Shown here: positions 37,362-58,137 of the stretch, piece after piece
Numbering within the stretch: the first letter of the stretch is position 1
Layout: each line of letters starts with the position of its first letter
Virus record (IMG/VR): IMGVR_UViG_3300020147_000065
Coordinates: 124,001-188,000 of that record
Direction: 5' to 3' (one strand)
Length of the DNA stretch: 64,000 nt
Notes under the pieces: generated by a model
Seen by the model: the letters and a program-made list of their open reading frames with translations, nothing else
What the model was told of the DNA's origin: nothing
Databases searched by the model: none
Position numbers and translations under genes: made by a program

Positions 37362-37468
37362 TGGACAGGGAACGAAAGTTCCCTGTCTGCCCCCCCCCCG
37401 CCGGCACCCCTTGCATTCTCCCCGTGGTTTGCTATACTCTCAGTATCTTTAGTTAGAGAGGTTACGAC

Positions 37469-37780
37469 ATGAACAACGATGTGAAGATTCGCGGAATCGA
37501 GACGCCCGAACTGTGCCTGTGCTGCGGCTGCCAGGCCGAAATCGAAATCACCACGCCTGATGGTGTGGAGAAAATGTGCTTTTCTGAGGCGTTGCGTCAG
37601 TATCCTGACCATATGGCCGACTATGGCGAATCCATGTTTCGTGCTATGCAGGATGAGGCCGAAGTATTGGATGCGCAGTTGCAAGAGTTCCGCGCTGAGG
37701 CGTGGCACGAAGAAAATACACCACCGGCATGGTTTATGGATGAGCCGAACCCTTATATGGGTATGGGCTGCGATTTTTAA
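37469..37780 (+). CDS. Acidic Cys-containing small protein
   Basis: GAGG SD; CLCCGC motif. Confidence 0.65.
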   Translation: MNNDVKIRGIETPELCLCCGCQAEIEITTPDGVEKMCFSEALRQYPDHMADYGESMFRAMQDEAEVLDAQLQEFRAEAWHEENTPPAWFMDEPNPYMGMGCDF

Positions 37781-37883
37781 AACCTGCGCACTTTCCTGTT
37801 GTTTGGGAAAGTGCTGCCCCCCCCCTTGCTCCCATCTTTCTTTTTGTTATACTTGTAGTATCTTAGTTAGAGAGGTTAGAGCA

Positions 37884-38102
37884 ATGACTGAAAGCTATAA
37901 GCAAGCCGCAGAATGGGCGCAACATGAGGCAGACGTAACCGGCGAACCGTTTGTCGTCGTTCGGATGCCCAACACAACCGCGTATGGTTGCGAAAGAATC
38001 AGCGATTACGCAATGAAGATTCGCGGACGTGTCGCAGCAACAATTTATCTCGAAACGATTGTTCCGCAAGAGTGGCGGAAAGCAAGGAACGGTGAAAACT
38101 AA
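37884..38102 (+). CDS. Cassette gene, hypothetical
   Basis: GAGG SD, MTESYKQ; TAATG-coupled to the next gene. Confidence 0.6.
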   Translation: MTESYKQAAEWAQHEADVTGEPFVVVRMPNTTAYGCERISDYAMKIRGRVAATIYLETIVPQEWRKARNGEN

Positions 38103-38476
38103 TGGCTATCTCACGCGGCGGTAAAATCCGCAATGGTTCCTATGACCATAAATCTTATGGCCGTCCTCAGTTCGGTGTTGGTGGTGGTAATCGTATTCTC
38201 ACCAACGATAACACGAAATGGGGAGAATGGAAACGGGGCCACAAATACTCCCTGCGTATTCAAGACGTATCGCAGCGCAAGAACGGGCAAGTTCATGTGC
38301 AAGTGAAACCACACAAGGGCAACGGCGGCAGAGTCATTGAGAAAAAAGGTTTTGTGGAATTTTTAGACGGTGAACCACACATCACTGTAAATTGGCAGGG
38401 TAAACGCCTGACTATCGCTGAAATTCTCGCAATCGGCACACACTACGGAAATAAAGCGGCTCACTCTTCGGAGTGA
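38102..38476 (+). CDS. Basic hypothetical protein
   Basis: 124 aa; ends in a UUCG hairpin before the C-run. Confidence 0.65.
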   Translation: MAISRGGKIRNGSYDHKSYGRPQFGVGGGNRILTNDNTKWGEWKRGHKYSLRIQDVSQRKNGQVHVQVKPHKGNGGRVIEKKGFVEFLDGEPHITVNWQGKRLTIAEILAIGTHYGNKAAHSSE

Positions 38477-38543
38477 GCCTTGCCCCCCCCTTGCGCGATT
38501 TAAAGTTCTGCGTTATCCTTTATGTATCTTACGGAGGTTTATC

Positions 38544-38741
38544 ATGTGTTCTGATTCTTTTGCGTCTGCTTGTGCTATTGCCGAAGAGAAATCAAAGGAA
38601 ACACCAAAGTGTTTGCAGTGTGGTAAACCGATGGGGCCGGTTGAGGCCGCCATCAGCTCGACGTGTGGTAAATGTTGCCGTCTTAATCATCGTAAAGCGA
38701 TGGGAAAAAATAATGCTCAGAAAAATTGCCTTTTGGCTTAA
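38544..38741 (+). CDS. Small zinc-finger protein
   Basis: CLQCGK...CGKC; GGAGG SD. Confidence 0.55.
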   Translation: MCSDSFASACAIAEEKSKETPKCLQCGKPMGPVEAAISSTCGKCCRLNHRKAMGKNNAQKNCLLA

Positions 38742-38889
38742 TTACAATGATAAACGCGTCCCGCAATGGTTGCACAATCGCGTTTGTCGTGATCGTTGGA
38801 CGTGTGACGGGTGCTATCGTAAAATGGTGCCCCGTGGTGGAATGTATTTCGATAATGGCCCTTATTGTGGTCATTGCAACGGGAACTAA
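38713..38889 (+). CDS. Small zinc-finger protein
   Basis: MLRKIAF...CDGC...CGHC. Confidence 0.5.
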   Translation: MLRKIAFWLNYNDKRVPQWLHNRVCRDRWTCDGCYRKMVPRGGMYFDNGPYCGHCNGN

Positions 38890-38948
38890 TTAGTTCCCGT
38901 TGTGCCCCCCCCCTTGTGCTACTATTAATAGTGTGTAATAATTTAAGT

Positions 38949-39215
38949 ATGGCTAACCACTACGAACGCAATCGGACGTTTGCTCGGTTTCAACATAACG
39001 GAAAACACTATACCATCCACGAGCGCAAACATAAACTCAGCGATGGAACATGGCACACAAGCCGTTTTATCTGTGATGCTGCCGGAGATTGGCAAGGATG
39101 GGCAAAAGGTGTAAAGGTTGCGCGTGAAGTGTTGGATGGCAAGCGCGATAAGCATACCGGCAAACTTCTTGACCCTGTCGCCGCAATTCACGAAGCTGTA
39201 GCAGCTCTCCCATAA
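38949..39215 (+). CDS. Cassette gene, hypothetical (leaderless)
   Basis: C-run promoter then MANHYER. Confidence 0.65.
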   Translation: MANHYERNRTFARFQHNGKHYTIHERKHKLSDGTWHTSRFICDAAGDWQGWAKGVKVAREVLDGKRDKHTGKLLDPVAAIHEAVAALP

Positions 39216-39295
39216 GGAGAGCTGCCCCCCCCCTTGCAGCTAACTACATTCTGAGGGATAATAGATATATCACCTTTAGTTACGGAGAGTTTATC

Positions 39296-40710: not shown

Positions 40711-40801
40711 CGCCCCCCCCCCTTGGCAGTATTTAATTTCCGCAGTATAATCTAATTGTCGCTGAGAAATACGGCGAACAAAAAACAAGGTGAGGTTTAC
40801 A

Positions 40802-40912
40802 ATGGGTGATTTTCTTCTCGAAATGTTGGGCGAAGTGGACGAAGCGACGGTAGCGGCACAAGAGACACAATTAGCTGAAGTTGCGGAAACCAAAGACGCC
40901 GACGACGACTAA
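40802..40912 (+). CDS. 36-aa acidic peptide (paralog of 41289-41420; not in ORF track)
   Basis: MGDFLLEMLGEVDEATVAAQETQLAEVAETKDADDD; GAGG SD. Confidence 0.7.
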   Translation: MGDFLLEMLGEVDEATVAAQETQLAEVAETKDADDD

Positions 40913-41046
40913 TTATAGTCACAAAGGGTAAAAACGATTCGCAATTATCGCGCGGGGGAATCCGAAAATTCTCCCGCTCCTTTGTGCCCCCCCCTTGCGT
41001 CAAGTGGTATATTTGTTAAAATAAATGGTGAAAGTGAGGAAAACAA

Positions 41047-41420: not shown

Positions 41421-41790
41421 TTTATCACTAATCAGGGAAAGGGAAAGTCCGAAAGACTTTCCCTTTTCTTTTTTGTCTGCCCCCCCCCCTACCATCCCAC
41501 TGATAAAATCTCCCCGTGGGTGGCGATCATATGGAAGATGGAAGGCCAGTGAACCATGTCAAAAATAAAATCGAGAATCACTTTCACCTCCCCCTTGCAG
41601 CCATTGTCACACCTTGTTAAAATTTAAGGTATGAAATGGCCCAAGATAATTATCACCACGCGGAAGTATATCTACGGTATCCAATCACAAACCCATTGTC
41701 AATGGTTGGTGATGTGCATAAACAGCATCTAAGGGAGTAGATGCTGCCCCCCCCCTTGCAGCACTTTCATAAATTGCGTATAATTTAATT

Positions 41791-42058
41791 GTGAGCGGCG
41801 GAGTGAGTAAGCAATAGGGCAGTGAGGTTGAGAGAGTAACGTATACGGCGCGGTGATGAGTGCGGAGCCAATCGGACATCGAGATGAGCAACTCCAAACA
41901 ATACTCTAAGGCTATGGAACGAGGAAATCAAGATACATATACCTGCTGAGGCCCAAAGCTCCAACGTGAGCGTTTTCATAACAAGCAAAGATGCTGCGTA
42001 AGAAATTCCGCCCCGTGCGGTGAGATTCAAAGGCCACGAATCCTATATGCGTGGTATC
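41791..42058 (+). ncRNA. Candidate non-coding RNA cassette 1
   Basis: Perfect TTGCAG-17-TATAAT promoter with no ORF filling the cassette; 5' GGCGGAGT can pair with ATTCCGCC near the 3' end. Confidence 0.5.
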
Positions 42059-42107
42059 TTTGCCCCCCCCCCTTGCTCTATAATCCTTATCTGTTAAAAT
42101 AGATTAT

Positions 42108-43873: not shown

Positions 43874-44263
43874 ATGACGACAGCCAAAGTTAATCTAATC
43901 GGACTCATAACCTTTTCCGTTCGTATATCGTGGCAAGGCGACACACCAATAGAAACTTCACGTTTTCTTGATGAAGTAGAGAGTGCTATTCGGCGCTTCA
44001 TCATCACAAAAAGGTTATATTTAACCGATGATTTAGCCTTGCGTGTCTCAAGCCGTCCGTTTGAAGGATGCACGGCTCTGCGTCGGATACATGATGTGGC
44101 TGATATTTATGATGCTTTTGGTTATGTAGCTTATGAAGTAAATATGGACAATATAAGCAAACCTATTCCACTATGCAAACCATCATTGCGTAAAATATTT
44201 GGTCGCTTACCAAATAACATCTATTTCGATATTTATAAGCGTTCGGCTGTCACCTCAGAGTGA
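43874..44263 (+). CDS. Paralog family B protein, copy 1
   Basis: C-terminal CxxxLxxxFGxLPxNIY motif. Confidence 0.7.
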   Translation: MTTAKVNLIGLITFSVRISWQGDTPIETSRFLDEVESAIRRFIITKRLYLTDDLALRVSSRPFEGCTALRRIHDVADIYDAFGYVAYEVNMDNISKPIPLCKPSLRKIFGRLPNNIYFDIYKRSAVTSE

Positions 44264-44314
44264 CAGCCTTGCCCCCCCCCTTGTGAACCTGCCCCGTGGT
44301 TGGTAAAATATAAA

Positions 44315-44558
44315 GCGTTCGGTAGATAGCTTAGGAAAAAGGGAGTGACGACCCGAATAAACTTTGCGCTACTCACAATCTGACGGACTGTAAGAATAAC
44401 TGCATACGTCGTGCAGGGTGTTCAAATGTCAGAGGGCCAGCAACGTGGCACAGTCCAACACAAAACAAGAGAGCCGGTGAGGAACCGGTGAGGTCGAAAT
44501 TGAAATAAGTCGGGCCTCTAAAACCTGACAAAGATTCGGTGTAATGAGCCGAACGCCT
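44315..44558 (+). ncRNA. Candidate structured non-coding RNA cassette 2 with possible pseudoknot
   Basis: Closing stem GCGTTCGG/CCGAACGC; crossed pairings TCTGAC/GTCAGA and GGACTGT/ACAGTCC; several hairpins; no sense ORF. Confidence 0.65.
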
Positions 44559-44640
44559 CTTACAAAAGTATCTGACTACAAAATCTCTTGAGTTGTGCCC
44601 CCCCCTTGTCTGATTCATAAATCTACGATAGAATTAAAGT

Positions 44641-44868
44641 ATGATTAAAACAGAAGAAATGGGCGAGTTTGAAATAGGTCAAACCCATCGTGGGTTTTAT
44701 CTGTATGGAATACGGCAATCCACGGGGAAGAGTTTGTATTGGCAGGGTCGCAAACGTGGTTGGTGTAATGGAGCAATTCCTGACGGCTACTTTAAAAGTA
44801 AAGATCATATCTTTAACAGCGTCGGTGCAGTCCTTCAGCTTGTTGCTGACAAAACCTATCGAGTATAG
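44641..44868 (+). CDS. Cassette gene, hypothetical (leaderless)
   Basis: TAGAAT-6-ATG. Confidence 0.65.
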   Translation: MIKTEEMGEFEIGQTHRGFYLYGIRQSTGKSLYWQGRKRGWCNGAIPDGYFKSKDHIFNSVGAVLQLVADKTYRV

Positions 44869-44920
44869 GTTTTGCCCCCCCCCCTTGCACCCTTTAAAAC
44901 TTAGAGTTAGAATATATTAC

Positions 44921-45136
44921 ATGGAAACACAAGCGCCTGATTCGATTATCGTTTACCGTTCGCCAAGTGACAAGCTGATTGCCGAAACTCAATATGATAT
45001 TATGATGGCAGTCGGCAACTTTTTCTGGGACAACTGGCTCGTGATTTTGGGTGGCCTCGGATTCGGAATCTTCCTTTTCGCTGTGCTGATTCCGTGGTTT
45101 CAAGACAGCGTAATTAAAGGTCGGGTTCGCCGCTAA
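44921..45136 (+). CDS. Single-TM membrane protein (leaderless)
   Basis: METQAPDSIIVYRS... with hydrophobic C-half. Confidence 0.65.
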   Translation: METQAPDSIIVYRSPSDKLIAETQYDIMMAVGNFFWDNWLVILGGLGFGIFLFAVLIPWFQDSVIKGRVRR

Positions 45137-45207
45137 GCGGTGGGCCTTGCCCCCCCCCCTTGTGCAGCATAGTAAATTTGTTAAAATAAATAGTGAGGTT
45201 AATCATT

Positions 45208-45432
45208 ATGAAAATTGCTTCTGCTGCTCCGACAAACACTGGTGTAAATGTTCAGTTGTCCTCTCAGGTCGCCTACATTGGCCGCAATGCCAACATCGGG
45301 CGTCAGGCTAACATTGGCTGCAATGCCAACATCGGGCGTCAGGCTAACATTGGCCGCCCATTCAATGCTACCATGCAACAGGCCGCCGCGCATCGTCGCC
45401 GGATGATGCCCGTGCTGCGGCGCACGAAGTAA
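45208..45432 (+). CDS. Small protein with hexapeptide repeats (ANIGRQ/ANIGCN)
   Basis: 18-nt unit repeated about five times, forming a duplicated 36-nt block at 45275-45356. Confidence 0.65.
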   Translation: MKIASAAPTNTGVNVQLSSQVAYIGRNANIGRQANIGCNANIGRQANIGRPFNATMQQAAAHRRRMMPVLRRTK

Positions 45433-45507
45433 GGAACGGGGAGCATAAAAGCTCCCCGTTCTGCCCCCCCCCTTGTCATAAATAACATATTTGATAAAAT
45501 ATATTAC

Positions 45508-45927
45508 ATGACAATCACAAGATTTCATCGCCCACCAAACGACAAGCCACTGCTCGCAATGTTAATTGTGGTATGCTTGATTCTCGGCATTGCCATCGCC
45601 CAAGCCTCAGAGCCACAAGTAACTCAACCTCAATTCAAACAAGAGTTTCGGTTCATGCCGTGGCAAGATCAGGGCGAACGAAATGTTCAGACGCAAATAC
45701 CTCTCGCTAAATTCTTATGGGGAGAAGGCCCGACAGATCAAAACCTCGAAGATTTTGAAGATATGTGCCGACGCTTTGAGGAACCGGGCGGGTTTCAAAG
45801 TGAAGCTGAAATGGAAGCTGCCCGACGTGTTCTCGGTGTGCCGGAAGAACTTATGGATTTATACGTTGATGAAGGGTATGGAAAAGGGCACATTCCGATC
45901 AAATTACCAGCGACTCTCGATGTTTGA
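45508..45927 (+). CDS. Secreted or membrane-anchored protein
   Basis: N-terminal hydrophobic helix ending AIAQA. Confidence 0.65.
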   Translation: MTITRFHRPPNDKPLLAMLIVVCLILGIAIAQASEPQVTQPQFKQEFRFMPWQDQGERNVQTQIPLAKFLWGEGPTDQNLEDFEDMCRRFEEPGGFQSEAEMEAARRVLGVPEELMDLYVDEGYGKGHIPIKLPATLDV

Positions 45928-45978
45928 GAGTTTGCCCCCCCCTTGTTCAATAGTTTATTACGAGTTAAAATATATTAC

Positions 45979-46281
45979 ATGAAGAACGGTCATGTATATC
46001 CCGACGGTCATATTCTCATTGATGGACGGCAACACCAACTAATGCCACGCGCGGCATCTGTAGCAACCCGACTTGTGCGTGGTTTGGATAATCACACACT
46101 TGAAATTACCACCGAAGAACCATCCTCATTTGATGTGTCACTACATAAGGTTGGTGGCCAAAATTGGATTAACTATCGTAGCCCGGTTTACGGTGATATG
46201 ATGTTCTGTGACACAGGATTAATCAAGGTGTTCGGCACAATCCCTGAGAATATCTATGTGGCGGTAGTTCCTCAGCAATGA
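45979..46281 (+). CDS. Paralog family B protein, copy 2
   Basis: FCDTGLIKVFGTIPENIYV. Confidence 0.7.
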   Translation: MKNGHVYPDGHILIDGRQHQLMPRAASVATRLVRGLDNHTLEITTEEPSSFDVSLHKVGGQNWINYRSPVYGDMMFCDTGLIKVFGTIPENIYVAVVPQQ

Positions 46282-46332
46282 GGAATTGCCCCCCCCCTTG
46301 CAGCATCTATTATCTAATGTTATCCTTTAATC

Positions 46333-46887
46333 ATGGAAAAGAACGACATCCTCGATATTTACCACAAAGGCGCTGCTGTTGGTATTGCTACTCCGTTTTC
46401 TGAACTGCCATTAGGCCGATATTTTTATGATGGTGGACAGGAATATAAAAAGGTCAGCGATGACACCGCATTCGGTAATCATTCGCGTCGTTTCAATCCT
46501 TCTTATTTGGTTGTAATTACGTTGGTTACACCGCTATTTAACTTTCATGATGTGGATAAAGTTTATCTGGCGATGTGTGACCATTTCGGCGTGTTTTTCC
46601 ACAGACAGAACACCCGCGCAGACGTTGCCCGTGCCTTAATGAATTTGCCCGTGTTGGTGGTTACTGAGGTTGTAGCATGGGCAAAGATGAAATGGGCGCA
46701 AAAGATGTTCGAGGTCGAAACTCAGCGCGGCATCGGCAACCCCGAAAAGTTGGCCGAATTACAGCAGACGTGGAGTGCGCTTTATAATGCGATTGCAGCA
46801 AAGCATTATCCGGCGGGGCGTTTCTACTGGGTGGAGTGTCGCGGCGATATTCGCCGCATTGACCCTTCGCGTTACCGTTCGCGGTAA
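46333..46887 (+). CDS. Cassette gene, hypothetical (leaderless)
   Basis: TTGCAG-17-TATCCT-ATG. Confidence 0.75.
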   Translation: MEKNDILDIYHKGAAVGIATPFSELPLGRYFYDGGQEYKKVSDDTAFGNHSRRFNPSYLVVITLVTPLFNFHDVDKVYLAMCDHFGVFFHRQNTRADVARALMNLPVLVVTEVVAWAKMKWAQKMFEVETQRGIGNPEKLAELQQTWSALYNAIAAKHYPAGRFYWVECRGDIRRIDPSRYRSR

Positions 46888-46938
46888 CGCTTGCCCCCCC
46901 CCTTGTCAAAATCTATAAATGAGCGTATAATAATTATC

Positions 46939-47262
46939 ATGTTATTCTCGAAGCCAATCATTCTAACCGGACACTATAATGTGGGAGCAAAGTTCATTCG
47001 TTTAAACGGTAGAGCTTATGATTTGTTTGCTACTGCTGATTATGCAATTACAAATTTACTCCCCGCATATAAAGATGAAGCGGAAATTGCTCTTGTTCTA
47101 TCGAATAGACATATACAGGGCGGTTTAACCTTCAAACGAACCGTTGATGAGAACGGTGATATTTATTATGTCGGTTATGGTTATGAGGGGAGAGTTTGTA
47201 GACCCGCATTAAAAGAGTTATTCGGCTATCTTCCACGCCGGTTATACCTAAAGTTCATTTAG
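46939..47262 (+). CDS. Paralog family B protein, copy 3
   Basis: VCRPALKELFGYLPRRLYLKF. Confidence 0.7.
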   Translation: MLFSKPIILTGHYNVGAKFIRLNGRAYDLFATADYAITNLLPAYKDEAEIALVLSNRHIQGGLTFKRTVDENGDIYYVGYGYEGRVCRPALKELFGYLPRRLYLKFI

Positions 47263-47309
47263 GTATTGCCCCCCCCTTGTTCCCCCGTGGTTTGCTTGAT
47301 ATAATTTAA

Positions 47310-47502
47310 TTGTCAGTGAGAGAGCGCATATAGTTTGATAAAGCGTAACGTGGCTCATGGTAGGACATAGGCCCCCTGCCAGTAAGGGTTCTTCGGAATC
47401 GTATAATGAGTTCCCCCGCCTAAATGGTGTCTATTCATTTCACTGGATAGGCCCAACATGAAAGCGCAGTGGTGAGTGAAAGCATCCTTCTCTCACTGAC
47501 AA
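47310..47502 (+). ncRNA. Candidate structured non-coding RNA cassette 3
   Basis: Perfect 14-bp terminal stem TTGTCAGTGAGAGA/TCTCTCACTGACAA starting near +1 of a TTGTTC-17-TATAAT promoter; internal UUCG hairpin; no ORF. Confidence 0.7.
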
Positions 47503-47598
47503 GGTTTGGGCGTATGACCCAGTAATGAGGCGCACAGAGGCGTCTGCCCGTTGCCCCCCCCCCTTGCATTAACTAAAGAAAAGTAGGATAATAATAGT

Positions 47599-47919
47599 AT
47601 GGATAAAGTTAATGATGAACAACAACCCGCTGTTTCTATGGATTTGCAACTCGTTGCCTTCTCAAAAGACAATCAGGACGGCTCTGGCAGCGTTCACGTT
47701 TTCAACGACACCGACGAACTTCGCAAACATTTTGATGAAGTTTACGACGCCGACATTGACGAAGAGTGCGCGAAAGAAGCAGAAGAAAAGTTCAACGTTG
47801 CCATCGCAGGTTCTCAACCCTACGAAGTTGGCACGGTTGAAACGAAAACCATCAAAGTGGTAGTCGAAAACGGCAAAGTGCGACTCGCTGAGTCCCTACA
47901 CTTTAGCACCGGACAATAG
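47599..47919 (+). CDS. Acidic hypothetical protein (leaderless)
   Basis: TTGCAT-17-TATAAT then ATG. Confidence 0.7.
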   Translation: MDKVNDEQQPAVSMDLQLVAFSKDNQDGSGSVHVFNDTDELRKHFDEVYDADIDEECAKEAEEKFNVAIAGSQPYEVGTVETKTIKVVVENGKVRLAESLHFSTGQ

Positions 47920-48183
47920 TCCGGGGCTTGCCCCCCCCCTACCTTGACACCGGCTCCCTCATATGGTAGAATTTATATTAGGAGTCTCATATGTCTTTAT
48001 TTATCGTGTTATTTGGGATAGCACTACTTTTTACGATGCCGGTTTTTGTGAATCTTAAACCACTTTATTACTTCTTATGGATGGTTGAAGCGATATTGAT
48101 ATTCACAAACTAACTCGTAAGAGTTAGTGCCCCCCCCCTTGCGGCAAATATCGCAAACATATAAAATTTAATGTGGAAGTGCT

Positions 48184-48708
48184 ATGAGAAACATTGTTTT
48201 CAGAAACAGCCTCATAAGCGAGCATCGTGCAGGACAGTTGCTTCGCAGTTGGAAAAATCAGTTACGCGGCAAGTTAAGCCCTAAAAGACGTAAAGAAGTT
48301 AACGGTTTGCTTAACGATATGCGTAAAGCATTAAAGACCGTTGGCCCCTATGAGCGCGATGGTGTGTTTACTGTCGAAGAAGTTATGGCTTTAGTGGGAA
48401 CAGGCCACGGACACGTTAATCGTCGCCCTATTTCGTATGACACTAAACGTCTAAAAGTGTTCAAGCGAACGGGCACAGTATGTGTCGCGTGTGGTTTACC
48501 TGCCTCACACTTTGCTTTAGAGCGTTGCTGGGAACAAGATGGTGATTTGTGGCACTTCAATTTGTATGGTTTGAGAGACGGTAAAGAAATTCTCTTTACT
48601 CGTGACCACATTAAACCACTTGCCAGGGGTGGAACCGATTGTCTCGATAATCAGGAAACAATGTGCTGCACTTGCAATTTCAAAAAGGGCGACAAGTGGG
48701 AAGAGTGA
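48184..48708 (+). CDS. HNH endonuclease
   Basis: CVACG...TRDHIKPLARGGTDCLDNQETMCCTCNFKKG. Confidence 0.9.
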   Translation: MRNIVFRNSLISEHRAGQLLRSWKNQLRGKLSPKRRKEVNGLLNDMRKALKTVGPYERDGVFTVEEVMALVGTGHGHVNRRPISYDTKRLKVFKRTGTVCVACGLPASHFALERCWEQDGDLWHFNLYGLRDGKEILFTRDHIKPLARGGTDCLDNQETMCCTCNFKKGDKWEE

Positions 48709-48766
48709 TCTTCCCCGTCTGCCCCCCCCCTTTGCACACATAGACAATTTTAAGTATCCTTTAAGT

Positions 48767-49102
48767 ATGGAAAGAACATTTAACGTAGAACTTCAGGGAA
48801 CACTGTGGTATGTTGGTCATAATATGCTGATTCTCGAATCAGCACCGGCTCTGGATGAAATTCTGGGCGTAGAAGGAAAACGTAAACGCGTAACTGTCAG
48901 CGATAAGCATTTCAAGGGTGCGACAAACACCCTGACAACCGTGCCAAAAGCAAAGCGCAATGACACCGTGCCGGAATTCCTCGCCTATTCGTTTCGCAAG
49001 GGCACCGACAAATTCGTTTACATCTGTCCTAATGGCTTGATGTGTTACTTCCATGTGAACGAAAAGCCACCGCGCAGACTCTACATTAAAGTAGAAGATT
49101 AA
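48767..49102 (+). CDS. Paralog family B protein, copy 4 (divergent)
   Basis: ICPNGLMCYF...PPRRLYIK. Confidence 0.6.
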   Translation: MERTFNVELQGTLWYVGHNMLILESAPALDEILGVEGKRKRVTVSDKHFKGATNTLTTVPKAKRNDTVPEFLAYSFRKGTDKFVYICPNGLMCYFHVNEKPPRRLYIKVED

Positions 49103-49166
49103 CCCGAAAGGGTTAATCTTGCCCCCCCCCTTGTCAACATTTAACTTTCGCAGTAAAATCTTAACC

Positions 49167-49598
49167 ATGAACAACATGAACGACGCTCTTTGCACGGCTG
49201 CCCGAATCAATCGCACGTATGGTTTGCAAATGGTTATCTGTCCCGCCATCGGTGGACGTTTCGACGTGACACAAGGCGTCAATCCTGAAACCGGAAACCC
49301 GCTGCGTATGCTGGAAAGCGCAACACCGGCACAACTCGTTACGTGGCTTGACGGCTACGAAATGGCCCTGATTGGTGCCGAACTTCGCGCGGAAGATGCT
49401 AAGTCTTACGACTTTCCCGGCGACAAAGGAGGGTTCGACTTTTCTTTCGATGAAATTTTCGGCTCACTAATGGAGCCGCAACCCGTCGCACAAATCGAAA
49501 GTATTAGTATTGATTCCCGCATGGTTGCAGGGCCACAGGGTATCGAACGATTCACGATTATTGAGCGTGTTATTAACACGCTCTACACGATTCTCTAA
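49167..49598 (+). CDS. Cassette gene, hypothetical (leaderless)
   Basis: TTGTCA-17-TAAAAT then ATG. Confidence 0.7.
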   Translation: MNNMNDALCTAARINRTYGLQMVICPAIGGRFDVTQGVNPETGNPLRMLESATPAQLVTWLDGYEMALIGAELRAEDAKSYDFPGDKGGFDFSFDEIFGSLMEPQPVAQIESISIDSRMVAGPQGIERFTIIERVINTLYTIL

Positions 49599-49669
49599 GC
49601 GGCGGGGAGTTTCAAACTCCCCGCCTTGCCCCCCCTTGCGAGAATTAAGGAAATCGCTATACTATAACC

Positions 49670-49939
49670 ATGTCTAATCAAGAATGGCCGAAGTTTTGGC
49701 TTGAAACGAATCAGCGTTGGGGATGGGTAAGGTCGCGTGAAGAGTGGGAGGAAATGGTAAACGACACCATTCAGCCCAATTTGTGGGGATTTCGCACACG
49801 CGAAGAAATTCTCGAATACTTCCTGACCTCACGACAGCACCGGGACGGAATCGCAAACTTCGGCCAATACACCTATGCCGAGCACACCGGGGAAAAGACC
49901 TTGCGAGAGTTCTTAGCGGAGCACGGTATCGAGCCGTGA
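49670..49939 (+). CDS. Cassette gene, hypothetical (leaderless)
   Basis: TTGCGA-17-TATACT-6-ATG. Confidence 0.7.
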   Translation: MSNQEWPKFWLETNQRWGWVRSREEWEEMVNDTIQPNLWGFRTREEILEYFLTSRQHRDGIANFGQYTYAEHTGEKTLREFLAEHGIEP

Positions 49940-50220
49940 TCTGCCCCCCCCCTTGCGTCTCCTAATAGAACTTGTTAGAATGTAATTCGTTAGTTCAATC
50001 GGGAGGGCGTTATGGATTCTGCGCTTGATTATGCGATTTACTTTGCTAACCGCTATCACATGATTATGATTATCGTGTTGATTGCTGCCAACGATTATCG
50101 GGCAATACCTGAAGAGTGTAACGACTTAGGTTATCCCGTCATAGATAAGATTCTACCAAAGGATTAACAATGGCTAAAACCTTTGATTTCTTGTAGTTAC
50201 CTTAAAGGAGGTTAACTACA

Positions 50221-50436
50221 ATGAAACACAATCACAGAACTGGTGATGTAAAGCGTCAGTGCCACAGCGGATGCTATTATGGAATGAAAGATTCTCTAAA
50301 ACAGGACGAGAATTACCACCGTCGTGCAACCGAACGCCGTTTGATTTCCGACATTATGAAGGGTAAACTCGACCCTGATGAAGCCATCTTTCCTGTAAAG
50401 GGCATCCATAGTTCCGATTGGTGGGATTGGGACTAA
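50221..50436 (+). CDS. Small hypothetical protein
   Basis: AAGGAGG SD; ends SDWWDWD. Confidence 0.65.
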   Translation: MKHNHRTGDVKRQCHSGCYYGMKDSLKQDENYHRRATERRLISDIMKGKLDPDEAIFPVKGIHSSDWWDWD

Positions 50437-50525
50437 TAGATGCCCCCCCCCCTTGCTAATCAAATGACAAAAGCCTCTTCCTATGATATAATTCATCTGG
50501 AAGAGGCTTTAGTCCCGGAATTGGG

Positions 50526-51122
50526 TCATAAACTCAAGTCAAGTTTATCGTTAGCAGCCACACAATAGAATTGTGTGCCGTCAATGTTAGCAGTTCGATT
50601 AAAATGCCAATGACCAAATACCCATATTGCCGGACGGTGTATCTGTAACATGGTCATTAAAGCCAACGTGGTTTGCGTAGGCTTTACCGGCCCGTTTATC
50701 AGGCGAGGCATATTCATATGCTCGATTATACCAAACGGGGCATCGTGACTGATTACAATATCCGGCTTGGTGGCCTCATAGAGAGTAACAGCATTGGTTA
50801 AATCTTCCATGCTTAATTGCTCATCTTTCCACCAACTTATACCCTCTCTACGACGGTATTGATCTATTGACCATGCACCGGATAGAAAGAATACGCCGTG
50901 CTTGTAACCATAATCACCCAGATAAAGAGGATGGGCGCGGCACTCTTCGGGAGAATCATGATTACCACGTATGAAACCATCTATACCAGTAAAGACGGTT
51001 TCTCGATTGAAGTTACGAAAACCTAATCCCAAATCTCCCAAATGTAATGTCAAGTCTGCTTTTTCGGGATACCAAAAGCCAACCCGTTCTGCGTGAGAAT
51101 CACCAAGAAATCTATAAATCAT
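50526..51122 (-). CDS. Calcineurin-like metallophosphoesterase (inverted cassette)
   Basis: GDSH, HLGD, RGNHD, SHDAP and FGHWH motifs. Confidence 0.9.
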   Translation of the reverse strand: MIYRFLGDSHAERVGFWYPEKADLTLHLGDLGLGFRNFNRETVFTGIDGFIRGNHDSPEECRAHPLYLGDYGYKHGVFFLSGAWSIDQYRRREGISWWKDEQLSMEDLTNAVTLYEATKPDIVISHDAPFGIIEHMNMPRLINGPVKPTQTTLALMTMLQIHRPAIWVFGHWHFNRTANIDGTQFYCVAANDKLDLSL

Positions 51123-53867: not shown

Positions 53868-54290
53868 ATGAGCAAAACAAAAGTAACCCCGAACAGCGTA
53901 GCATTCAGCGCGTTGCAGGAAGTTGTCAAAGTTGGTAACACGAAACTGAAAGTTCTTTTCGTTGCCGAACGCGGCGTCCACGGTGCCGAAACCTACTGGA
54001 ACGACGAAATGCGCGGCAATGTCGGCAAAGAACTGACCGTGAGAGATTCCGACGCGAGCAGCAACGAATTTCAGCTTTCCGACGATTTCTGGTATCCTGC
54101 AATCTCCTTGTTTGCTGAACCCAAACAGCCGGTAGAAGTGTCGCTGCCTGATTACACGGCGACGGTGTATCCTACCCATCTCCAAGTTGGTTATCAGGAA
54201 ATCACCAAAGAAATGGTTCTGGCAATCGTCAAGGGTGGACTGGATACGGGCTTCCTCTCCACATCAGATTTGGAGGGTCTGAATAAATAA
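53868..54290 (+). CDS. Paralog family C protein, copy 1
   Basis: GxHG...W...M...G...WYPAxxL and LPDYTA...VGxQxxTKEMxLxIV...GF motifs. Confidence 0.85.
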   Translation: MSKTKVTPNSVAFSALQEVVKVGNTKLKVLFVAERGVHGAETYWNDEMRGNVGKELTVRDSDASSNEFQLSDDFWYPAISLFAEPKQPVEVSLPDYTATVYPTHLQVGYQEITKEMVLAIVKGGLDTGFLSTSDLEGLNK

Positions 54291-54375
54291 GCCCCGGCTC
54301 CCTTCGGGGAGCTTTGCCCCCCCTTGCGCACAGCTCTAATCTTCTGTATAATTATTAGTAATAAGGAGGCCAACG

Positions 54376-54645
54376 ATGCCTAAATCAATGTTTCGTCCAT
54401 CGGATGTAATGGACAACGCGCATTTCAATGACCACACTAAGGTCTTGACTGTGACGTTTCAGAGTGGTTCGGTTTACGAGTATGAGAATGTGCCTGAGCG
54501 CGTTTTCAATCGTTTAAACGCCGCTCCTTCTAAGGGACAGTTCTTTAATCAGAACATCCGTAATAAATACGCATTTAAGTGTGTGTTTAAACCCGCTAAG
54601 ACAACTACAGCGCCGCAGGTTCAGCCCGTGGCTGTCACTGTCTAA
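54376..54645 (+). CDS. KTSC domain protein
   Basis: LTVTFQSGSVYEYENVPERVFNRLNAAPSKGQFFNQNIRNKY; AAGGAGG SD. Confidence 0.9.
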   Translation: MPKSMFRPSDVMDNAHFNDHTKVLTVTFQSGSVYEYENVPERVFNRLNAAPSKGQFFNQNIRNKYAFKCVFKPAKTTTAPQVQPVAVTV

Positions 54646-54742
54646 TGTTCCTCCTTACCGGGAAACGGAGGCTTCCGGGCCTCCGTTTCTTCGGTCTGCC
54701 CCCCCCTTGTCACAAGTAAATTAAAACGATATAATCTATTAC

Positions 54743-55159
54743 ATGAGTGAAACAAACAACGTGAACATTGCTGAACTGAGCCTGAACCAAATTGCATTCT
54801 TAAAGCTCGGCCTCAAAGAAGGCGACACCGTAAAGGTTGTTGCTAAAGTGCCAGAAGGCACACACGGTTCTGATATTTACTGGGAAACGAGTATGACCCG
54901 TAAAATCGGTAAAACCCAACGAGTAGTAGGTGCGCGGAACCATAGCCGAATCGAACTCGAAGATGGGTATTACTACCCTGCCCTCGCGCTGGAAAAAGTG
55001 AAAGTTGTCAAGGAAATTCGGCTCCCTGACTACACCGCTTTAGTCAGCGAAGATGGTGTATCCGTGGGTTGCCAAAACCTCACCAAAGAAATGGTGTTGG
55101 GTATCGTAAAAGCCGCAGTGGAAACGAACTTCATTTCACAGGAGGACTTGGAGTTCTAA
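54743..55159 (+). CDS. Paralog family C protein, copy 2
   Basis: Family C motifs. Confidence 0.85.
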   Translation: MSETNNVNIAELSLNQIAFLKLGLKEGDTVKVVAKVPEGTHGSDIYWETSMTRKIGKTQRVVGARNHSRIELEDGYYYPALALEKVKVVKEIRLPDYTALVSEDGVSVGCQNLTKEMVLGIVKAAVETNFISQEDLEF

Positions 55160-55233
55160 GCCGGGAGCCGTCGAAAGACGGCGACCTGCCCCCCCCCTTG
55201 TCACTACTCAAGAATAACAGTAAAATATATTCC

Positions 55234-55653
55234 ATGAGTGATAAAGTAAAGACAATGAATGATGTGGCTTTCGAGTTTCTCAATGAGAAATTCAAAGTTG
55301 GCGACAAAGTGCGAGTCACCATGCGGGTTGACTCTGGTGTGCAGGGTAATCGAATTGACTGGCTTGAGGGAATGGAAGAGGCTCTCAATTCGGGACTTCA
55401 CACTATTCTGGATACCAACGAGTCGTATGGTGCGTTCCGACTGAGTTGTGGTTACTGGTTCCCGGCGTTGGCAATCAGCTCTGATGTTGGTAAAGTCACT
55501 GTCAAACTGCCCGACTACACAGCCGAAATCACCAAAGAAAAAGTCAACGTAGGTTGTCAAGTTCTGACAAAAGAGATGATTCTCAGTATCGTAAAGGCCG
55601 CAGTGGACACCGGCTTTTTAAATGAGGAGGATATTGCCTCACTTAAAGGTTAA
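55234..55653 (+). CDS. Paralog family C protein, copy 3
   Basis: Family C motifs; leaderless MSDKVK. Confidence 0.85.
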   Translation: MSDKVKTMNDVAFEFLNEKFKVGDKVRVTMRVDSGVQGNRIDWLEGMEEALNSGLHTILDTNESYGAFRLSCGYWFPALAISSDVGKVTVKLPDYTAEITKEKVNVGCQVLTKEMILSIVKAAVDTGFLNEEDIASLKG

Positions 55654-55732
55654 GCGGCGGGGAGCTGCCTTCAGGCAGCGACCTCTTGCCCCCCCCTTGC
55701 ACTAACCAACTAAAAACGATAGAATATATTCC

Positions 55733-56158
55733 ATGAGTGATACAACAGCAAAGACGGTTAATGATGCAGCGTTTGAGATTCTCAGCGCAACGGTCAAAGA
55801 AGGCAGCAAGGTTCGCGTAATTCTTCGTATCCCAAAAGGTATGCATGGAAGCCGCATCTCATGGGTTGACTCGATGGACGGAAACGTGGGCGTCGGTATC
55901 CACACTGTAACCGATGTAAGCCCTCGCTACGGTGCTTTCGAGTTGGACAACGAAAAGTGGTATCCTGCGGTTGCTCTTTCGGCGGACGCGGAAACCGTTC
56001 GCGTCGCGCTCCCTGACTACGAAGCAGAAATTACCAAAGATGGTATCGTAGTCGCGGGGCAGAACCTCACCAAAGAGATGGTTCTCGGCATCGTGCAGGG
56101 TGCGCTCGACACCGGATTCCTTGATAAAGGAGATGTAGCCACTATTAAGACTTCCTAA
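55733..56158 (+). CDS. Paralog family C protein, copy 4
   Basis: Family C motifs. Confidence 0.85.
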   Translation: MSDTTAKTVNDAAFEILSATVKEGSKVRVILRIPKGMHGSRISWVDSMDGNVGVGIHTVTDVSPRYGAFELDNEKWYPAVALSADAETVRVALPDYEAEITKDGIVVAGQNLTKEMVLGIVQGALDTGFLDKGDVATIKTS

Positions 56159-56238
56159 GCAACGGGGAGCCATCCACGGGTGGCGACCTTTTGCCCCCCC
56201 CCTTGCACCAAAATAAGATAAGCGGTATAATTTATTAC

Positions 56239-56676
56239 ATGAGCGATACACAAACAACCCCCGAACTGACCGTGAACCAAGCCGCATTTAATGTTTTAAA
56301 TGCGAAAGTGACCGAAGGCGACAAGATTCGCGTCGTCCTCAAAGTGCCTATTACCGTGCATGGTAGTGATGTGAACTGGGTCGAAGAGATGGACAACACC
56401 ATCAACAAAACGCTTCGCGTTCGCCGCGTTGACGCAAGCAATGGTTCTTTCTATCTCAGCAACGGCTACTGGTATCCTGCCGTGGCACTCTCCACCGAAG
56501 TAGCAAAAATCACCGTGCCGCTGCCGGATTACACGGCGGAAATCACCAAAGAACAGGTCAACGTCGGCTGCCAGATTTTGACCAAAGAAATGATTCTCGG
56601 CATCGTGCAAGGCGCGTTGGATGTAGGGTTTCTGAGCGAAGAGGATGTGAACCGCCTCGACACCAGAGAAGTATAA
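56239..56676 (+). CDS. Paralog family C protein, copy 5
   Basis: Family C motifs; leaderless MSDTQT. Confidence 0.85.
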   Translation: MSDTQTTPELTVNQAAFNVLNAKVTEGDKIRVVLKVPITVHGSDVNWVEEMDNTINKTLRVRRVDASNGSFYLSNGYWYPAVALSTEVAKITVPLPDYTAEITKEQVNVGCQILTKEMILGIVQGALDVGFLSEEDVNRLDTREV

Positions 56677-56750
56677 CCGGGTGGACTCTTCGGAGTCCAC
56701 CCTGCCCCCCCCCCTTGCGCTGATAGAATTTAAACAGTATAATTTATTCC

Positions 56751-57167
56751 ATGAGTGAAACAAGAAAGACGGTTAATGACGCGGCGTTTGAAATCCTCAA
56801 CGCACAGTTGAACATTGGTGATAGAGTTCGTATTGTCGCCAAAATTGATGAGGGTGTCCACGGCAGCAAGACTGTTTGGACATCTCGCATGAATGATAGT
56901 GTGGGTCAGTTTATGACTATTCGCGGTGTTGAACCTGAGTATGGTGCTTTTCAGTTGGATAACTATTACTGGTATCCTGCCGTGGCACTCGATACTCAGG
57001 TGCATAAAGTGACGGTTAATCTGCCGGATTATTGCGCTGAAATCACCAAAGAAGGGGTGAACGTGGGTTGTCAGAACCTCACCAAAGAAATGATTCTGCA
57101 AATCGTGCAGGGCGCGTTAGACGTGGGTTTTCTCGATGCCGAGGACATCGAAAGTCTGAAAGTATAA
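56751..57167 (+). CDS. Paralog family C protein, copy 6
   Basis: Family C motifs. Confidence 0.85.
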   Translation: MSETRKTVNDAAFEILNAQLNIGDRVRIVAKIDEGVHGSKTVWTSRMNDSVGQFMTIRGVEPEYGAFQLDNYYWYPAVALDTQVHKVTVNLPDYCAEITKEGVNVGCQNLTKEMILQIVQGALDVGFLDAEDIESLKV

Positions 57168-57244
57168 GCGGCGGGGAGCTATCGAAAGATAGCGACCTTG
57201 CCCCCCCCTTGGCAACACTCAATATAAACAGTAAAATATAAGAC

Positions 57245-57643
57245 ATGAACATGAACCAAGCAGCATTCGAGACGTTGAAGGAAACGCGCGGCATCGGTGA
57301 CAAAGTGAAGGTTGTCCTGCAAGTGGACAAAGGTGTGCATGGAAACCTCTTCCGTTGGGATTCCGGTATGACCGAACAAATCGGAAAAGTCTTGACAATC
57401 AAAGAGTTCGATTCTTCGGACAACACCATCCTGCTGTCAGATAGCCGTTATTATCCCGCACTCGCTTTGATGAGCGACAACGGCCCCATTATCGTGGAAT
57501 TGCCCGATTACAAGGCAGAAATCCACGCTGACCGTGTGCAAGTTGGTTGTCAGTGCCTCACCAAACAGATGGTGTTGGACATCGTGAAGGGTGCAGTATC
57601 TGTCGGGTTTATGAGCGAATCAGATTTGGAGGGTCTGCGATAA
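57245..57643 (+). CDS. Paralog family C protein, copy 7
   Basis: Family C motifs. Confidence 0.85.
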   Translation: MNMNQAAFETLKETRGIGDKVKVVLQVDKGVHGNLFRWDSGMTEQIGKVLTIKEFDSSDNTILLSDSRYYPALALMSDNGPIIVELPDYKAEIHADRVQVGCQCLTKQMVLDIVKGAVSVGFMSESDLEGLR

Positions 57644-57720
57644 GCCCCCGCGGACTCTTCGGAGTCCGCCTTGCCCCCCCCCCTTGCACAAGGTTCAAAT
57701 TAAGGGGTATAATTTATTCC

Positions 57721-58137
57721 ATGAGCAAACAAAAGACGTTACACGACATTGCATTTGAAGAACTGGGCATCGAAGAGGGCGACTTCGCTAAAGTCGTCCT
57801 TAAAGTGGACGAAGACGTTCACGGTAACCCGCTCCGTTGGTCGCATGGTATGGAAGAAATGTTAGGTAAGACATTTCGCGTCACCAACATTGATACCAGC
57901 GACAACACAATCGAACTGAACAACGGCGAATGGTTCTCGGCTATTTCGCTCGAAAAGGCAACCGGCGAAATCAAGGTGCAATTACCGGATTACACCGCAG
58001 TCGTAACCAAAGAAGGCATGGAAGTTGGTTGCCAGAAACTCGACAAAGACAAGGTTTTGGAAATCGTTCAGGCTGCAATCACCACCGGTATGATTGACCG
58101 CGATGATGTCGAAGACCTCGACTATCACGACGACTAA
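57721..58137 (+). CDS. Paralog family C protein, copy 8
   Basis: Family C motifs; leaderless MSKQKT. Confidence 0.85.
   Translation: MSKQKTLHDIAFEELGIEEGDFAKVVLKVDEDVHGNPLRWSHGMEEMLGKTFRVTNIDTSDNTIELNNGEWFSAISLEKATGEIKVQLPDYTAVVTKEGMEVGCQKLDKDKVLEIVQAAITTGMIDRDDVEDLDYHDD

What the first reader, a model, noticed from the sequence alone, without database searches (positions are those of the whole stretch)
47277..47552. RNA candidate 3: ~190-nt RNA closed by a perfect 14-bp stem
Seen: TTGTCAGTGAGAGA...TCTCTCACTGACAA encloses several small stems (GGTTC-TTCG-GAATC, TCTATTCA/TGGATAGG). Size and closed ends recall 6S RNA, but the interior looks branched. Inference: an exonuclease-resistant regulatory or decoy RNA.
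Basis: partly seen in the sequence, partly recalled or inferred. Interest (0 to 1): 0.64.

Follow-up and report, generated by a model that had tools for sequence, protein, structure and literature searches.

The report
Orphan early non-coding RNA candidate
A soil jumbo phage has a strong early promoter that drives about 240 bases with no gene in them, and the transcript's first bases can pair perfectly with a stretch 165 bases downstream; it is probably a small stable RNA, but it has no relatives or expression data and its function is a guess.

Summary
A perfect 14-bp inverted repeat (47310-47323 / 47489-47502) is the only long-range perfect repeat of that size in the window.

- **Chance:** one such repeat somewhere in 64 kb occurs in about 10% of shuffles. 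What makes this one notable is its position.
- **Position:** the 5' arm starts at the predicted start site of a consensus early promoter (C-run, TTG, 17 nt, TATAAT; 47269-47305). The unit is one of three ORF-less units among about 72, and 53 of the others are leaderless genes.
- **Coding:** the only ORF (34 aa) has no Shine-Dalgarno and scores at the 5th percentile of real coding segments.
- **Folding:** the + strand folds to -63.9 kcal/mol (z -2.8), the lowest energy of all units. The interior alone is no more stable than shuffles, and it does not form a 6S-like rod.
- **Relatives:** Rfam gives nothing. There is no paralog and no homolog in any collection searched. The neighbouring genes are ORFans, and no RNA data exist.

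Verdict: a plausible orphan early small RNA whose two ends are locked in a helix. The 6S reading is not supported, and a decoy function is inference only. A Y-RNA-like role is conceivable, because the phage has a DUF2828 protein beside tRNA mimics 45 kb away, but the defining features tested were not met.

The parts
47268..47305 (+). Early promoter of the unit: G + C8 run (47268-47276), -35 TTGTTC (47277-47282), 17-nt spacer holding the CCCCGTGGTTTG motif, -10 TATAAT (47300-47305)
   Evidence: One of about 85 copies of the same motif on the + strand of the genome. The consensus scan does not list it because its -35 hexamer matches only 3 of 6.
47311..47313 (+). Predicted transcription start (most likely G47312, the 7th nt after the -10)
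   Evidence: Inferred: in 53 sister units the ATG of an ORF that fills the unit begins 7-8 nt after the -10 hexamer. No RNA data.
47310..47323 (+). 5' arm of the closing helix (TTGTCAGTGAGAGA)
   Evidence: pair probability 0.96
47489..47502 (+). 3' arm of the closing helix (TCTCTCACTGACAA)
47324..47467 (+). GCGC/GCGC extension of the closing helix (47324-47327 with 47464-47467), which encloses the multiloop
   Evidence: probability 0.74; predicted only
47359..47380 (+). Hairpin GGUAGG / CCUGCC
   Evidence: probability 0.75; predicted only
47387..47414 (+). Two mutually exclusive hairpins: GGUUC-UUCG-GAAUC (cUUCGg tetraloop, 47387-47400) or GGAAUCGU..AUGAGUUCC (47395-47414)
   Evidence: ambiguous
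47425..47455 (+). Best-supported inner hairpin (3 + 9 bp, loop UUUCAC). It has two U-G pairs, so it forms only on the + strand
   Evidence: probability 0.97 and 0.83; + strand -63.9 against - strand -52.7 kcal/mol
47468..47488 (+). Small 3'-side hairpin next to the closing helix
   Evidence: probability 0.5-0.7
47503..47553 (+). 3' tail up to the next promoter's C-run, with two small hairpins (47507-47521, 47528-47545) and no U-tract terminator
47357..47461 (+). 34-aa ORF, judged non-coding
   Evidence: No Shine-Dalgarno upstream. Codon log-odds 0.54, against 11.2 +/- 5.5 for real 34-codon segments.

Best explanation
The stretch 47268-47553 is a separate early transcription unit of an uncultured 221-kb soil phage, and it makes a small non-coding RNA instead of a protein. 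RNA polymerase starts at about G47312, from the same C-run/TTG/TATAAT promoter that drives some 70 neighbouring units. The first 12 transcribed bases pair with 47489-47500, which encloses a roughly 190-nt body and leaves a tail of about 50 nt. The tail is either trimmed back to the helix or kept. With the 5' triphosphate end and the 3' end both buried in one helix, the RNA should be long-lived. It most likely acts in trans by binding a protein, either a host factor or a phage RNA-binding protein, rather than by long antisense pairing. Shown here: the promoter motif, the absence of a credible ORF, the helix, and the strand asymmetry. Inferred: the start site, the existence and stability of the RNA, and everything about its function.
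For: The promoter belongs to a family of about 85 copies. In 53 units an ATG sits 6-7 nt after the -10 and opens an ORF that fills the unit, which fixes the expected start site, and the 5' arm begins there. Only three of about 72 array units lack a plausible ORF, and this is one. Its 34-aa ORF has no Shine-Dalgarno and scores 0.54, while a genuine 36-aa ORF in unit 40713 scores 25.7. All three stop codons end early genes, so recoding does not open the frame. There is no protein remnant. Among 72 units this one has the lowest folding energy and a 12-nt closure of its 5' end, against 8 nt or fewer in every other unit. The + strand has z -2.8 and the - strand z -1.05. The closing helix is present in all near-optimal folds. 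The phage invests heavily in RNA: 36 tRNAs, a tmRNA, tRNA mimics and a DUF2828 protein annotated as RNA-binding.
Against: There are no homologs, so no covariation test was possible. There are no expression data. The interior is no more structured than shuffled sequence. A 14-bp inverted repeat somewhere in the window has about 10% chance. There is no terminator, so the 3' end is undefined. The start-site argument was made after the helix was seen.
Confidence: 0.45

Rival explanations
1. Functionless filler. The unit is a promoter whose gene was lost or never existed, and the inverted repeat is a chance or recent duplication artefact. A transcript may be made but does nothing.
For: The interior has z 0.02. 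The window-wide chance of such a repeat is 0.10. The unit is a singleton with no homolog anywhere. Two other ORF-less units show no special fold.
Against: Intergenic space in this array is otherwise only 6-35 nt, so 240 nt of filler would be unusual. The 5' arm coincides with the predicted start. There is no trace of a decayed ORF.
Confidence: 0.25
2. A Y-RNA-like partner of the phage's DUF2828/vWA protein. The end-to-end helix would be the protein's docking site and the interior loop would tether a host nuclease. This is a special case of the best explanation.
For: Y RNAs are defined by a long stem formed by their 5' and 3' ends around a large loop (PMC4201824). Phage Ro60 proteins bind phage-encoded Y-like RNAs (PMC12135203). 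This genome encodes a 493-aa DUF2828+DUF7788 protein (phrog_850 'RNA-binding protein', E 1.9e-134). Some structurally similar Atlas clusters carry TROVE or vWA domains.
Against: The gene lies 45 kb away, and its own upstream region already holds tRNA-like RNAs. The candidate has no tRNA-like domain, no CGAA motif and no Rfam Y_RNA match. At 190 nt it is longer than the 80-130 nt given for Y RNAs. The protein shows no sequence match to solved Ro60 structures, and the single-sequence model was too poor to compare (pLDDT 44).
Confidence: 0.1
3. A small-protein gene. The 34-aa ORF at 47357-47461 is translated, and the surrounding structure is its leader and trailer.
For: The ORF is open and starts with ATG. 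Unit 40713, which has a similar 5' start (TTGTCnnTGAGA), does encode a leadered 36-aa protein.
Against: There is no Shine-Dalgarno, whereas the leadered genes of the array have clear ones. Its coding score is at the 5th percentile of real segments. The start codon lies inside a predicted helix.
Confidence: 0.08
4. A DNA-level element: a miniature inverted-repeat mobile element, or a pair of inverted protein-binding sites that loop the DNA between two promoters.
For: A 14-bp terminal inverted repeat around about 165 bp is the anatomy of a MITE.
Against: It is a single copy in the genome, and none was found in the viral or metagenome collections (L006 is a chance hit). No target-site duplication flanks the arms. 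The arm sequence occurs nowhere else in the genome. The U-G pairs in the inner hairpin favour an RNA reading on the + strand.
Confidence: 0.07

Closest known systems
6S RNA (Rfam RF00013 and relatives)
   Same: Size near 190 nt; the ends are paired in a closing stem; it would be abundant if the promoter is as strong as it looks.
   Different: No covariance-model match even at E<=10. There is no rod with a central bubble, because the interior halves pair no better than shuffles. The predicted shape is a multiloop with 4-5 short hairpins.
Y RNAs / YrlA and phage Yrl RNAs (PMC4201824, PMC12135203)
   Same: The stem is made by the 5' and 3' ends around a large, loosely structured interior. The genome encodes a possibly Ro-like RNA-binding protein.
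   Different: It is not next to that gene. It has no tRNA-like module, no CGAA motif and no Rfam match, and it is longer than typical Y RNAs.
phi29 packaging RNA (pRNA, Rfam RF00044)
   Same: A roughly 170-nt phage RNA made from an early promoter, with the 5' and 3' ends paired in one helix and a branched interior.
   Different: No Rfam match. This phage has a large terminase of the usual kind rather than a phi29-type packaging system.
T4 stable RNAs C and D and other orphan phage small RNAs
   Same: Small, stable, phage-encoded RNAs of unknown function in a genome rich in tRNAs (from my own knowledge).
   Different: Those lie within the tRNA cluster and are processed from its transcript. This unit has its own early promoter 24 kb from the tRNA cluster.

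Membership tests
6S RNA | Match to a 6S covariance model | tested here: not met
   Rfam 15, gathering threshold and E<=10: no hit of any family
6S RNA | Extended rod: 5' half pairs with 3' half around a central bubble | tested here: not met
   Interior duplex energy -29.5 against -34.1 +/- 4.7 kcal/mol for shuffles. The minimum-energy fold is branched. This rests on prediction only.
6S RNA | Binds RNA polymerase holoenzyme | not testable with these tools
   Needs a pull-down or gel shift
Y RNA / YrlA | Stem formed by the 5' and 3' ends enclosing a large loop | tested here: met
   Closing helix of 12-14 bp, probability 0.96
Y RNA / YrlA | Encoded next to a Ro60 (TROVE) gene | tested here: not met
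   The only candidate gene (DUF2828, genome 216817-218298) is 45 kb away. Whether it is a true Ro60 is itself unresolved.
Y RNA / YrlA | tRNA-like domain or conserved CGAA motif in the loop | tested here: not met
   ARAGORN and the Rfam tRNA model find nothing here; no CGAA in 47310-47502
Retron msr-msd RNA | Flanking inverted repeats a1/a2 | tested here: met
Retron msr-msd RNA | Reverse transcriptase gene directly downstream | tested here: not met
   The neighbours are 106- and 107-aa ORFans with no family match. No + strand ORF longer than 184 aa lies in window 44000-51000.
MITE | Several copies and a target-site duplication | tested here: not met
   Single copy; flanks TTAA and GGTT differ
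Intrinsic-terminator small RNA (Hfq type) | 3' GC-rich hairpin followed by a U-tract | tested here: not met
   No terminator-like site between 47310 and 47560

The most novel reading that the evidence does not exclude
The RNA founds a new class of phage early RNAs with locked ends, made within minutes of infection. It would sequester a host protein (RNA polymerase, a nuclease or a defence sensor) or load the phage's own DUF2828 protein, as part of an unusually RNA-centred takeover programme.
Probability: 0.12. Interest if true: 0.6.

Novelty: new member of a known kind. Interest (0 to 1): 0.35.

Why it matters
If real, this would be an early non-coding RNA from a phage lineage with no cultured relatives; the closest major capsid protein in GenBank phages is 25% identical. 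Few phage small RNAs have known functions, and one driven by a consensus early promoter would be an easy target for synthesis and binding assays. The setting may be more valuable than the RNA itself. About 70 one-gene units each have a C-run promoter and a start codon at the transcription start, which would make this an unusually clean natural case of leaderless phage gene expression.

Tried and rejected
- **Rfam:** the whole window at gathering threshold and the locus at E<=10 gave nothing.
- **tRNA/tmRNA scan of the window:** nothing.
- **GenBank phages, blastn:** nothing.
- **Two-arm pattern searches:** IMG/VR gave nothing. JGI metagenomes returned only the source contig and one unrelated, eukaryote-like chance hit, L006.
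- **Paralogs in the genome:** blastn and nhmmer found none. The similarity to units 40713 and 41747 is limited to the promoter and the first bases.
- **Neighbouring proteins as synteny anchors:** all are ORFans.
- **Relatives through the major capsid protein:** the best is 65% identical, on a 150-kb JGI contig. That contig ends just where its own C-run promoter array begins, so its early region could not be reached. The genome search does not hold these records.
- **Capsid alignment in IMG/VR:** nothing.
- **Promoter-architecture patterns:** IMG/VR and GTDB genomes gave only single chance matches.
- **Sequencing runs:** only the source soil sample and a second soil run with identical low-depth fragments. 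No variants and no RNA.
- **Recoding:** rejected, because all three stop codons end early genes.
- **Decayed-gene idea:** there is no protein similarity to any ORF of the genome.
- **Ro-like protein:** no PDB sequence hit, and the single-sequence AlphaFold model was too poor for a fold search.

Full report
**What the window is.** The window is bases 124001-188000 of a 221,108-bp virus record from a soil metagenome. It encodes a major head protein, a large terminase, rIIA, a DnaB-type helicase, a DNA polymerase and a ribonucleotide reductase. It also carries 36 tRNAs and a tmRNA. Its capsid protein is only about 25% identical to any GenBank phage. The nearest metagenomic relatives are 61-66% identical.

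**The setting.** From window position about 35.7 kb onward, and on to genome position about 193 kb, the + strand carries a dense array of one motif: TG, a run of 8-11 C, TTG(C/T)A, about 17 nt, TAtAAT. There are 70 loose matches in the window against 3.3 expected, and 95 C-runs on the + strand of the genome against 8 on the - strand. In 53 units an ATG lies 6-7 nt after the -10 hexamer and opens an ORF of at least 60 aa. In most of these the ORF ends 2-35 nt before the next C-run. These genes therefore look leaderless, with the transcription start at or next to the A of the ATG. TAA, TGA and TAG all serve as stops here (27, 18 and 11 times). So the suppressor-like tRNAs (CUA, UCA) do not indicate recoding of the early region. 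Most of the remaining units carry a short leader with a clear Shine-Dalgarno sequence.

**The observation.** The arms TTGTCAGTGAGAGA (47310-47323) and TCTCTCACTGACAA (47489-47502) are perfectly complementary. No other perfect inverted repeat of 14 bp or more with a 20-400 nt gap exists in the window. Shuffles give 0.115 such repeats per window, so the repeat alone has p of about 0.1.

Its position is what makes it unusual. The -10 TATAAT is at 47300-47305, so by the rule set by the 53 leaderless units the start falls at 47311-47313. From G47312 the first 12 transcribed bases pair with 47489-47500. In none of the other 71 units does the transcript's 5' end find more than 8 complementary bases downstream, and this unit has the lowest folding energy of all. 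This argument was made after the helix was seen, so it should be weighed accordingly.

**Coding or not.** There is no ATG at the start site. All three + frames have stops, including TAA. The longest + strand ORF (34 aa, 47357-47461) has no Shine-Dalgarno. Its codon log-odds is 0.54, against 11.2 +/- 5.5 for real 34-codon segments, which puts it at the 5th percentile. The 36-aa ORF of unit 40713 scores 25.7. No ORF of the genome resembles any frame of the unit. Together with units 41747 and 44272, this is one of three ORF-less units in the array.

**Structure.**
- The + strand (47311-47504) folds to -63.9 kcal/mol (z -2.8; 2 of 200 shuffles do as well). The - strand folds to -52.7 kcal/mol (z -1.05).
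- The difference comes from U-G pairs, for example in the 47429-47452 hairpin. This fits the strand that the promoter predicts.
- The well-supported elements are the closing helix (probability 0.96), its GCGC extension (0.74), the 47425-47455 hairpin (0.83-0.97) and GGUAGG/CCUGCC (0.75).
- Without the arms, the interior is no more stable than shuffles (z 0.02), and its two halves pair no better than shuffled halves. The thermodynamic signal is therefore essentially the closing helix, and a 6S-like rod is not supported.
- No terminator follows. The 3' end would have to come from processing, from trimming back to the helix, or from read-through.

**Homology.** Nothing was found at any level. Rfam gave no hit, and neither did GenBank phages or IMG/VR. 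JGI metagenomes returned only the source contig and one chance hit. GTDB genomes gave only chance matches to the promoter architecture. The genome itself holds no paralog. The flanking proteins are ORFans.

The closest relative's 150-kb contig stops at the first C-runs of its own array, so its early region is not assembled. Public runs hold only identical copies and no RNA. No covariation test and no expression test was therefore possible.

**Interpretation.** The most economical reading is a stand-alone early unit that makes a small non-coding RNA of about 190 nt (up to about 240 nt with the tail). Both of its ends sit in one helix. It is established knowledge that 5'-terminal helices block 5'-end-dependent RNase E/J attack and that 3' helices block 3' exonucleases, so such an RNA should be stable. 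A loosely structured interior held by a clamp suits a protein-binding platform better than a long antisense regulator, and no significant complementarity to other phage sequence was found. I put this reading at 0.45.

A Y-RNA-like role is a specific version of it. The genome encodes a 493-aa DUF2828+DUF7788 protein (phrog_850 'RNA-binding protein'). Some structurally similar Atlas clusters carry TROVE or vWA domains. However, that gene has its own tRNA-like RNAs directly upstream. The candidate is 45 kb away and lacks a tRNA-like module, the CGAA motif and any Rfam match. The protein's kinship to Ro60 could not be shown.

The rivals are functionless filler (0.25), a 34-aa protein gene (0.08) and a DNA-level element such as a MITE (0.07).

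**Novelty and score.** This would be a new, orphan member of the broad and well-known kind 'phage-encoded small RNA'. It belongs to none of the families considered. Because nothing beyond the sequence supports it, interest is moderate (0.35). The array of C-run promoters with leaderless genes, and the tRNA mimics beside the DUF2828 gene, are arguably the more remarkable features of this genome.

Noticed in passing
window 35730-64000, continuing to genome about 193 kb, with scattered copies at genome 3-4 kb and 206-221 kb: About 85 copies of a promoter motif (TG, C8-11, TTGCA, about 17 nt, TAtAAT), all on the + strand. In 53 of them an ATG sits 6-7 nt after the -10 and opens an ORF that fills the unit, so the early genes appear to be leaderless one-gene units with almost no spacers. 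The architecture was not found in IMG/VR or GTDB genomes.
   Followed up: partly
window 36728, 37390, 42703, 44272, 47269, 52762, 53130, 58168, 60556 (promoter spacers): About ten promoters, including the candidate's, carry CCCCGTGG(T/G)T(T/G)G in the spacer just before the -10. This may be an operator or a promoter subclass.
   Followed up: no
window 41747-42062 and 44272-44597: Two further promoter units without a plausible ORF (longest 29 and 26 aa). They have no sequence similarity to the candidate and no striking fold: z +1.5 and -1.9.
   Followed up: partly
window 40713-40986: This unit starts like the candidate (TTGTCGCTGAGA) but encodes a leadered, acidic 36-aa protein (40802-40912) with a Shine-Dalgarno and a strong coding score of 25.7. 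A terminator-like hairpin follows.
   Followed up: yes
window about 34100, 35185, 35790, 41535: A conserved element of about 50 nt (TGGAAGAAGGAArGyCAG..GTCAAAAATAAA..TCACTTT) occurs four times, each after a C-run that lacks the usual promoter. It may be a repeated small RNA or a regulatory site.
   Followed up: partly
genome 216200-218298 (L019 8200-10298), outside the window: A 493-aa DUF2828+DUF7788 protein (phrog_850 'RNA-binding protein'; Ro60-like helical plus alpha/beta layout, unproven) is preceded by a cluster of tRNA mimics. These include two cloverleaf-like RNAs with an encoded CCA end whose anticodon arm is capped by a 4-nt loop, and a tRNA(UCA) with a mismatched acceptor top.
   Followed up: partly
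genome 195-216 kb (L018, L019), outside the window: 36 tRNA genes, including CUA and UCA anticodons, plus a tmRNA (L018 10130-10525, - strand). The early genes nevertheless use all three stop codons.
   Followed up: partly
window 53868-58134: Eight tandem paralogous genes of about 138 aa (36-45% identical), each with its own promoter and a leaderless start.
   Followed up: yes
window 47991-48113: The unit two places downstream of the candidate encodes a 40-aa strongly hydrophobic peptide with a Shine-Dalgarno, possibly a small membrane protein.
   Followed up: no
L010 1-2700 (- strand) and L007/L010 terminase gene: The related phage (MCP 65% identical, GC 39%) has C-runs of 13-15 before TTGTCAA and shares the leader GTATCTTAGTTAGrGAGG with window units 37390-39225. 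Its assemblies break at the C-runs. Its terminase is 1261 aa with weak or faint intein and LAGLIDADG Pfam hits, against 915 aa here.
   Followed up: partly
genome positions 61 and 220983: The same promoter-like sequence of about 75 nt stands at both ends of the record. This suggests the assembly closes on itself or has a short terminal repeat, although the record is classed as linear.
   Followed up: no
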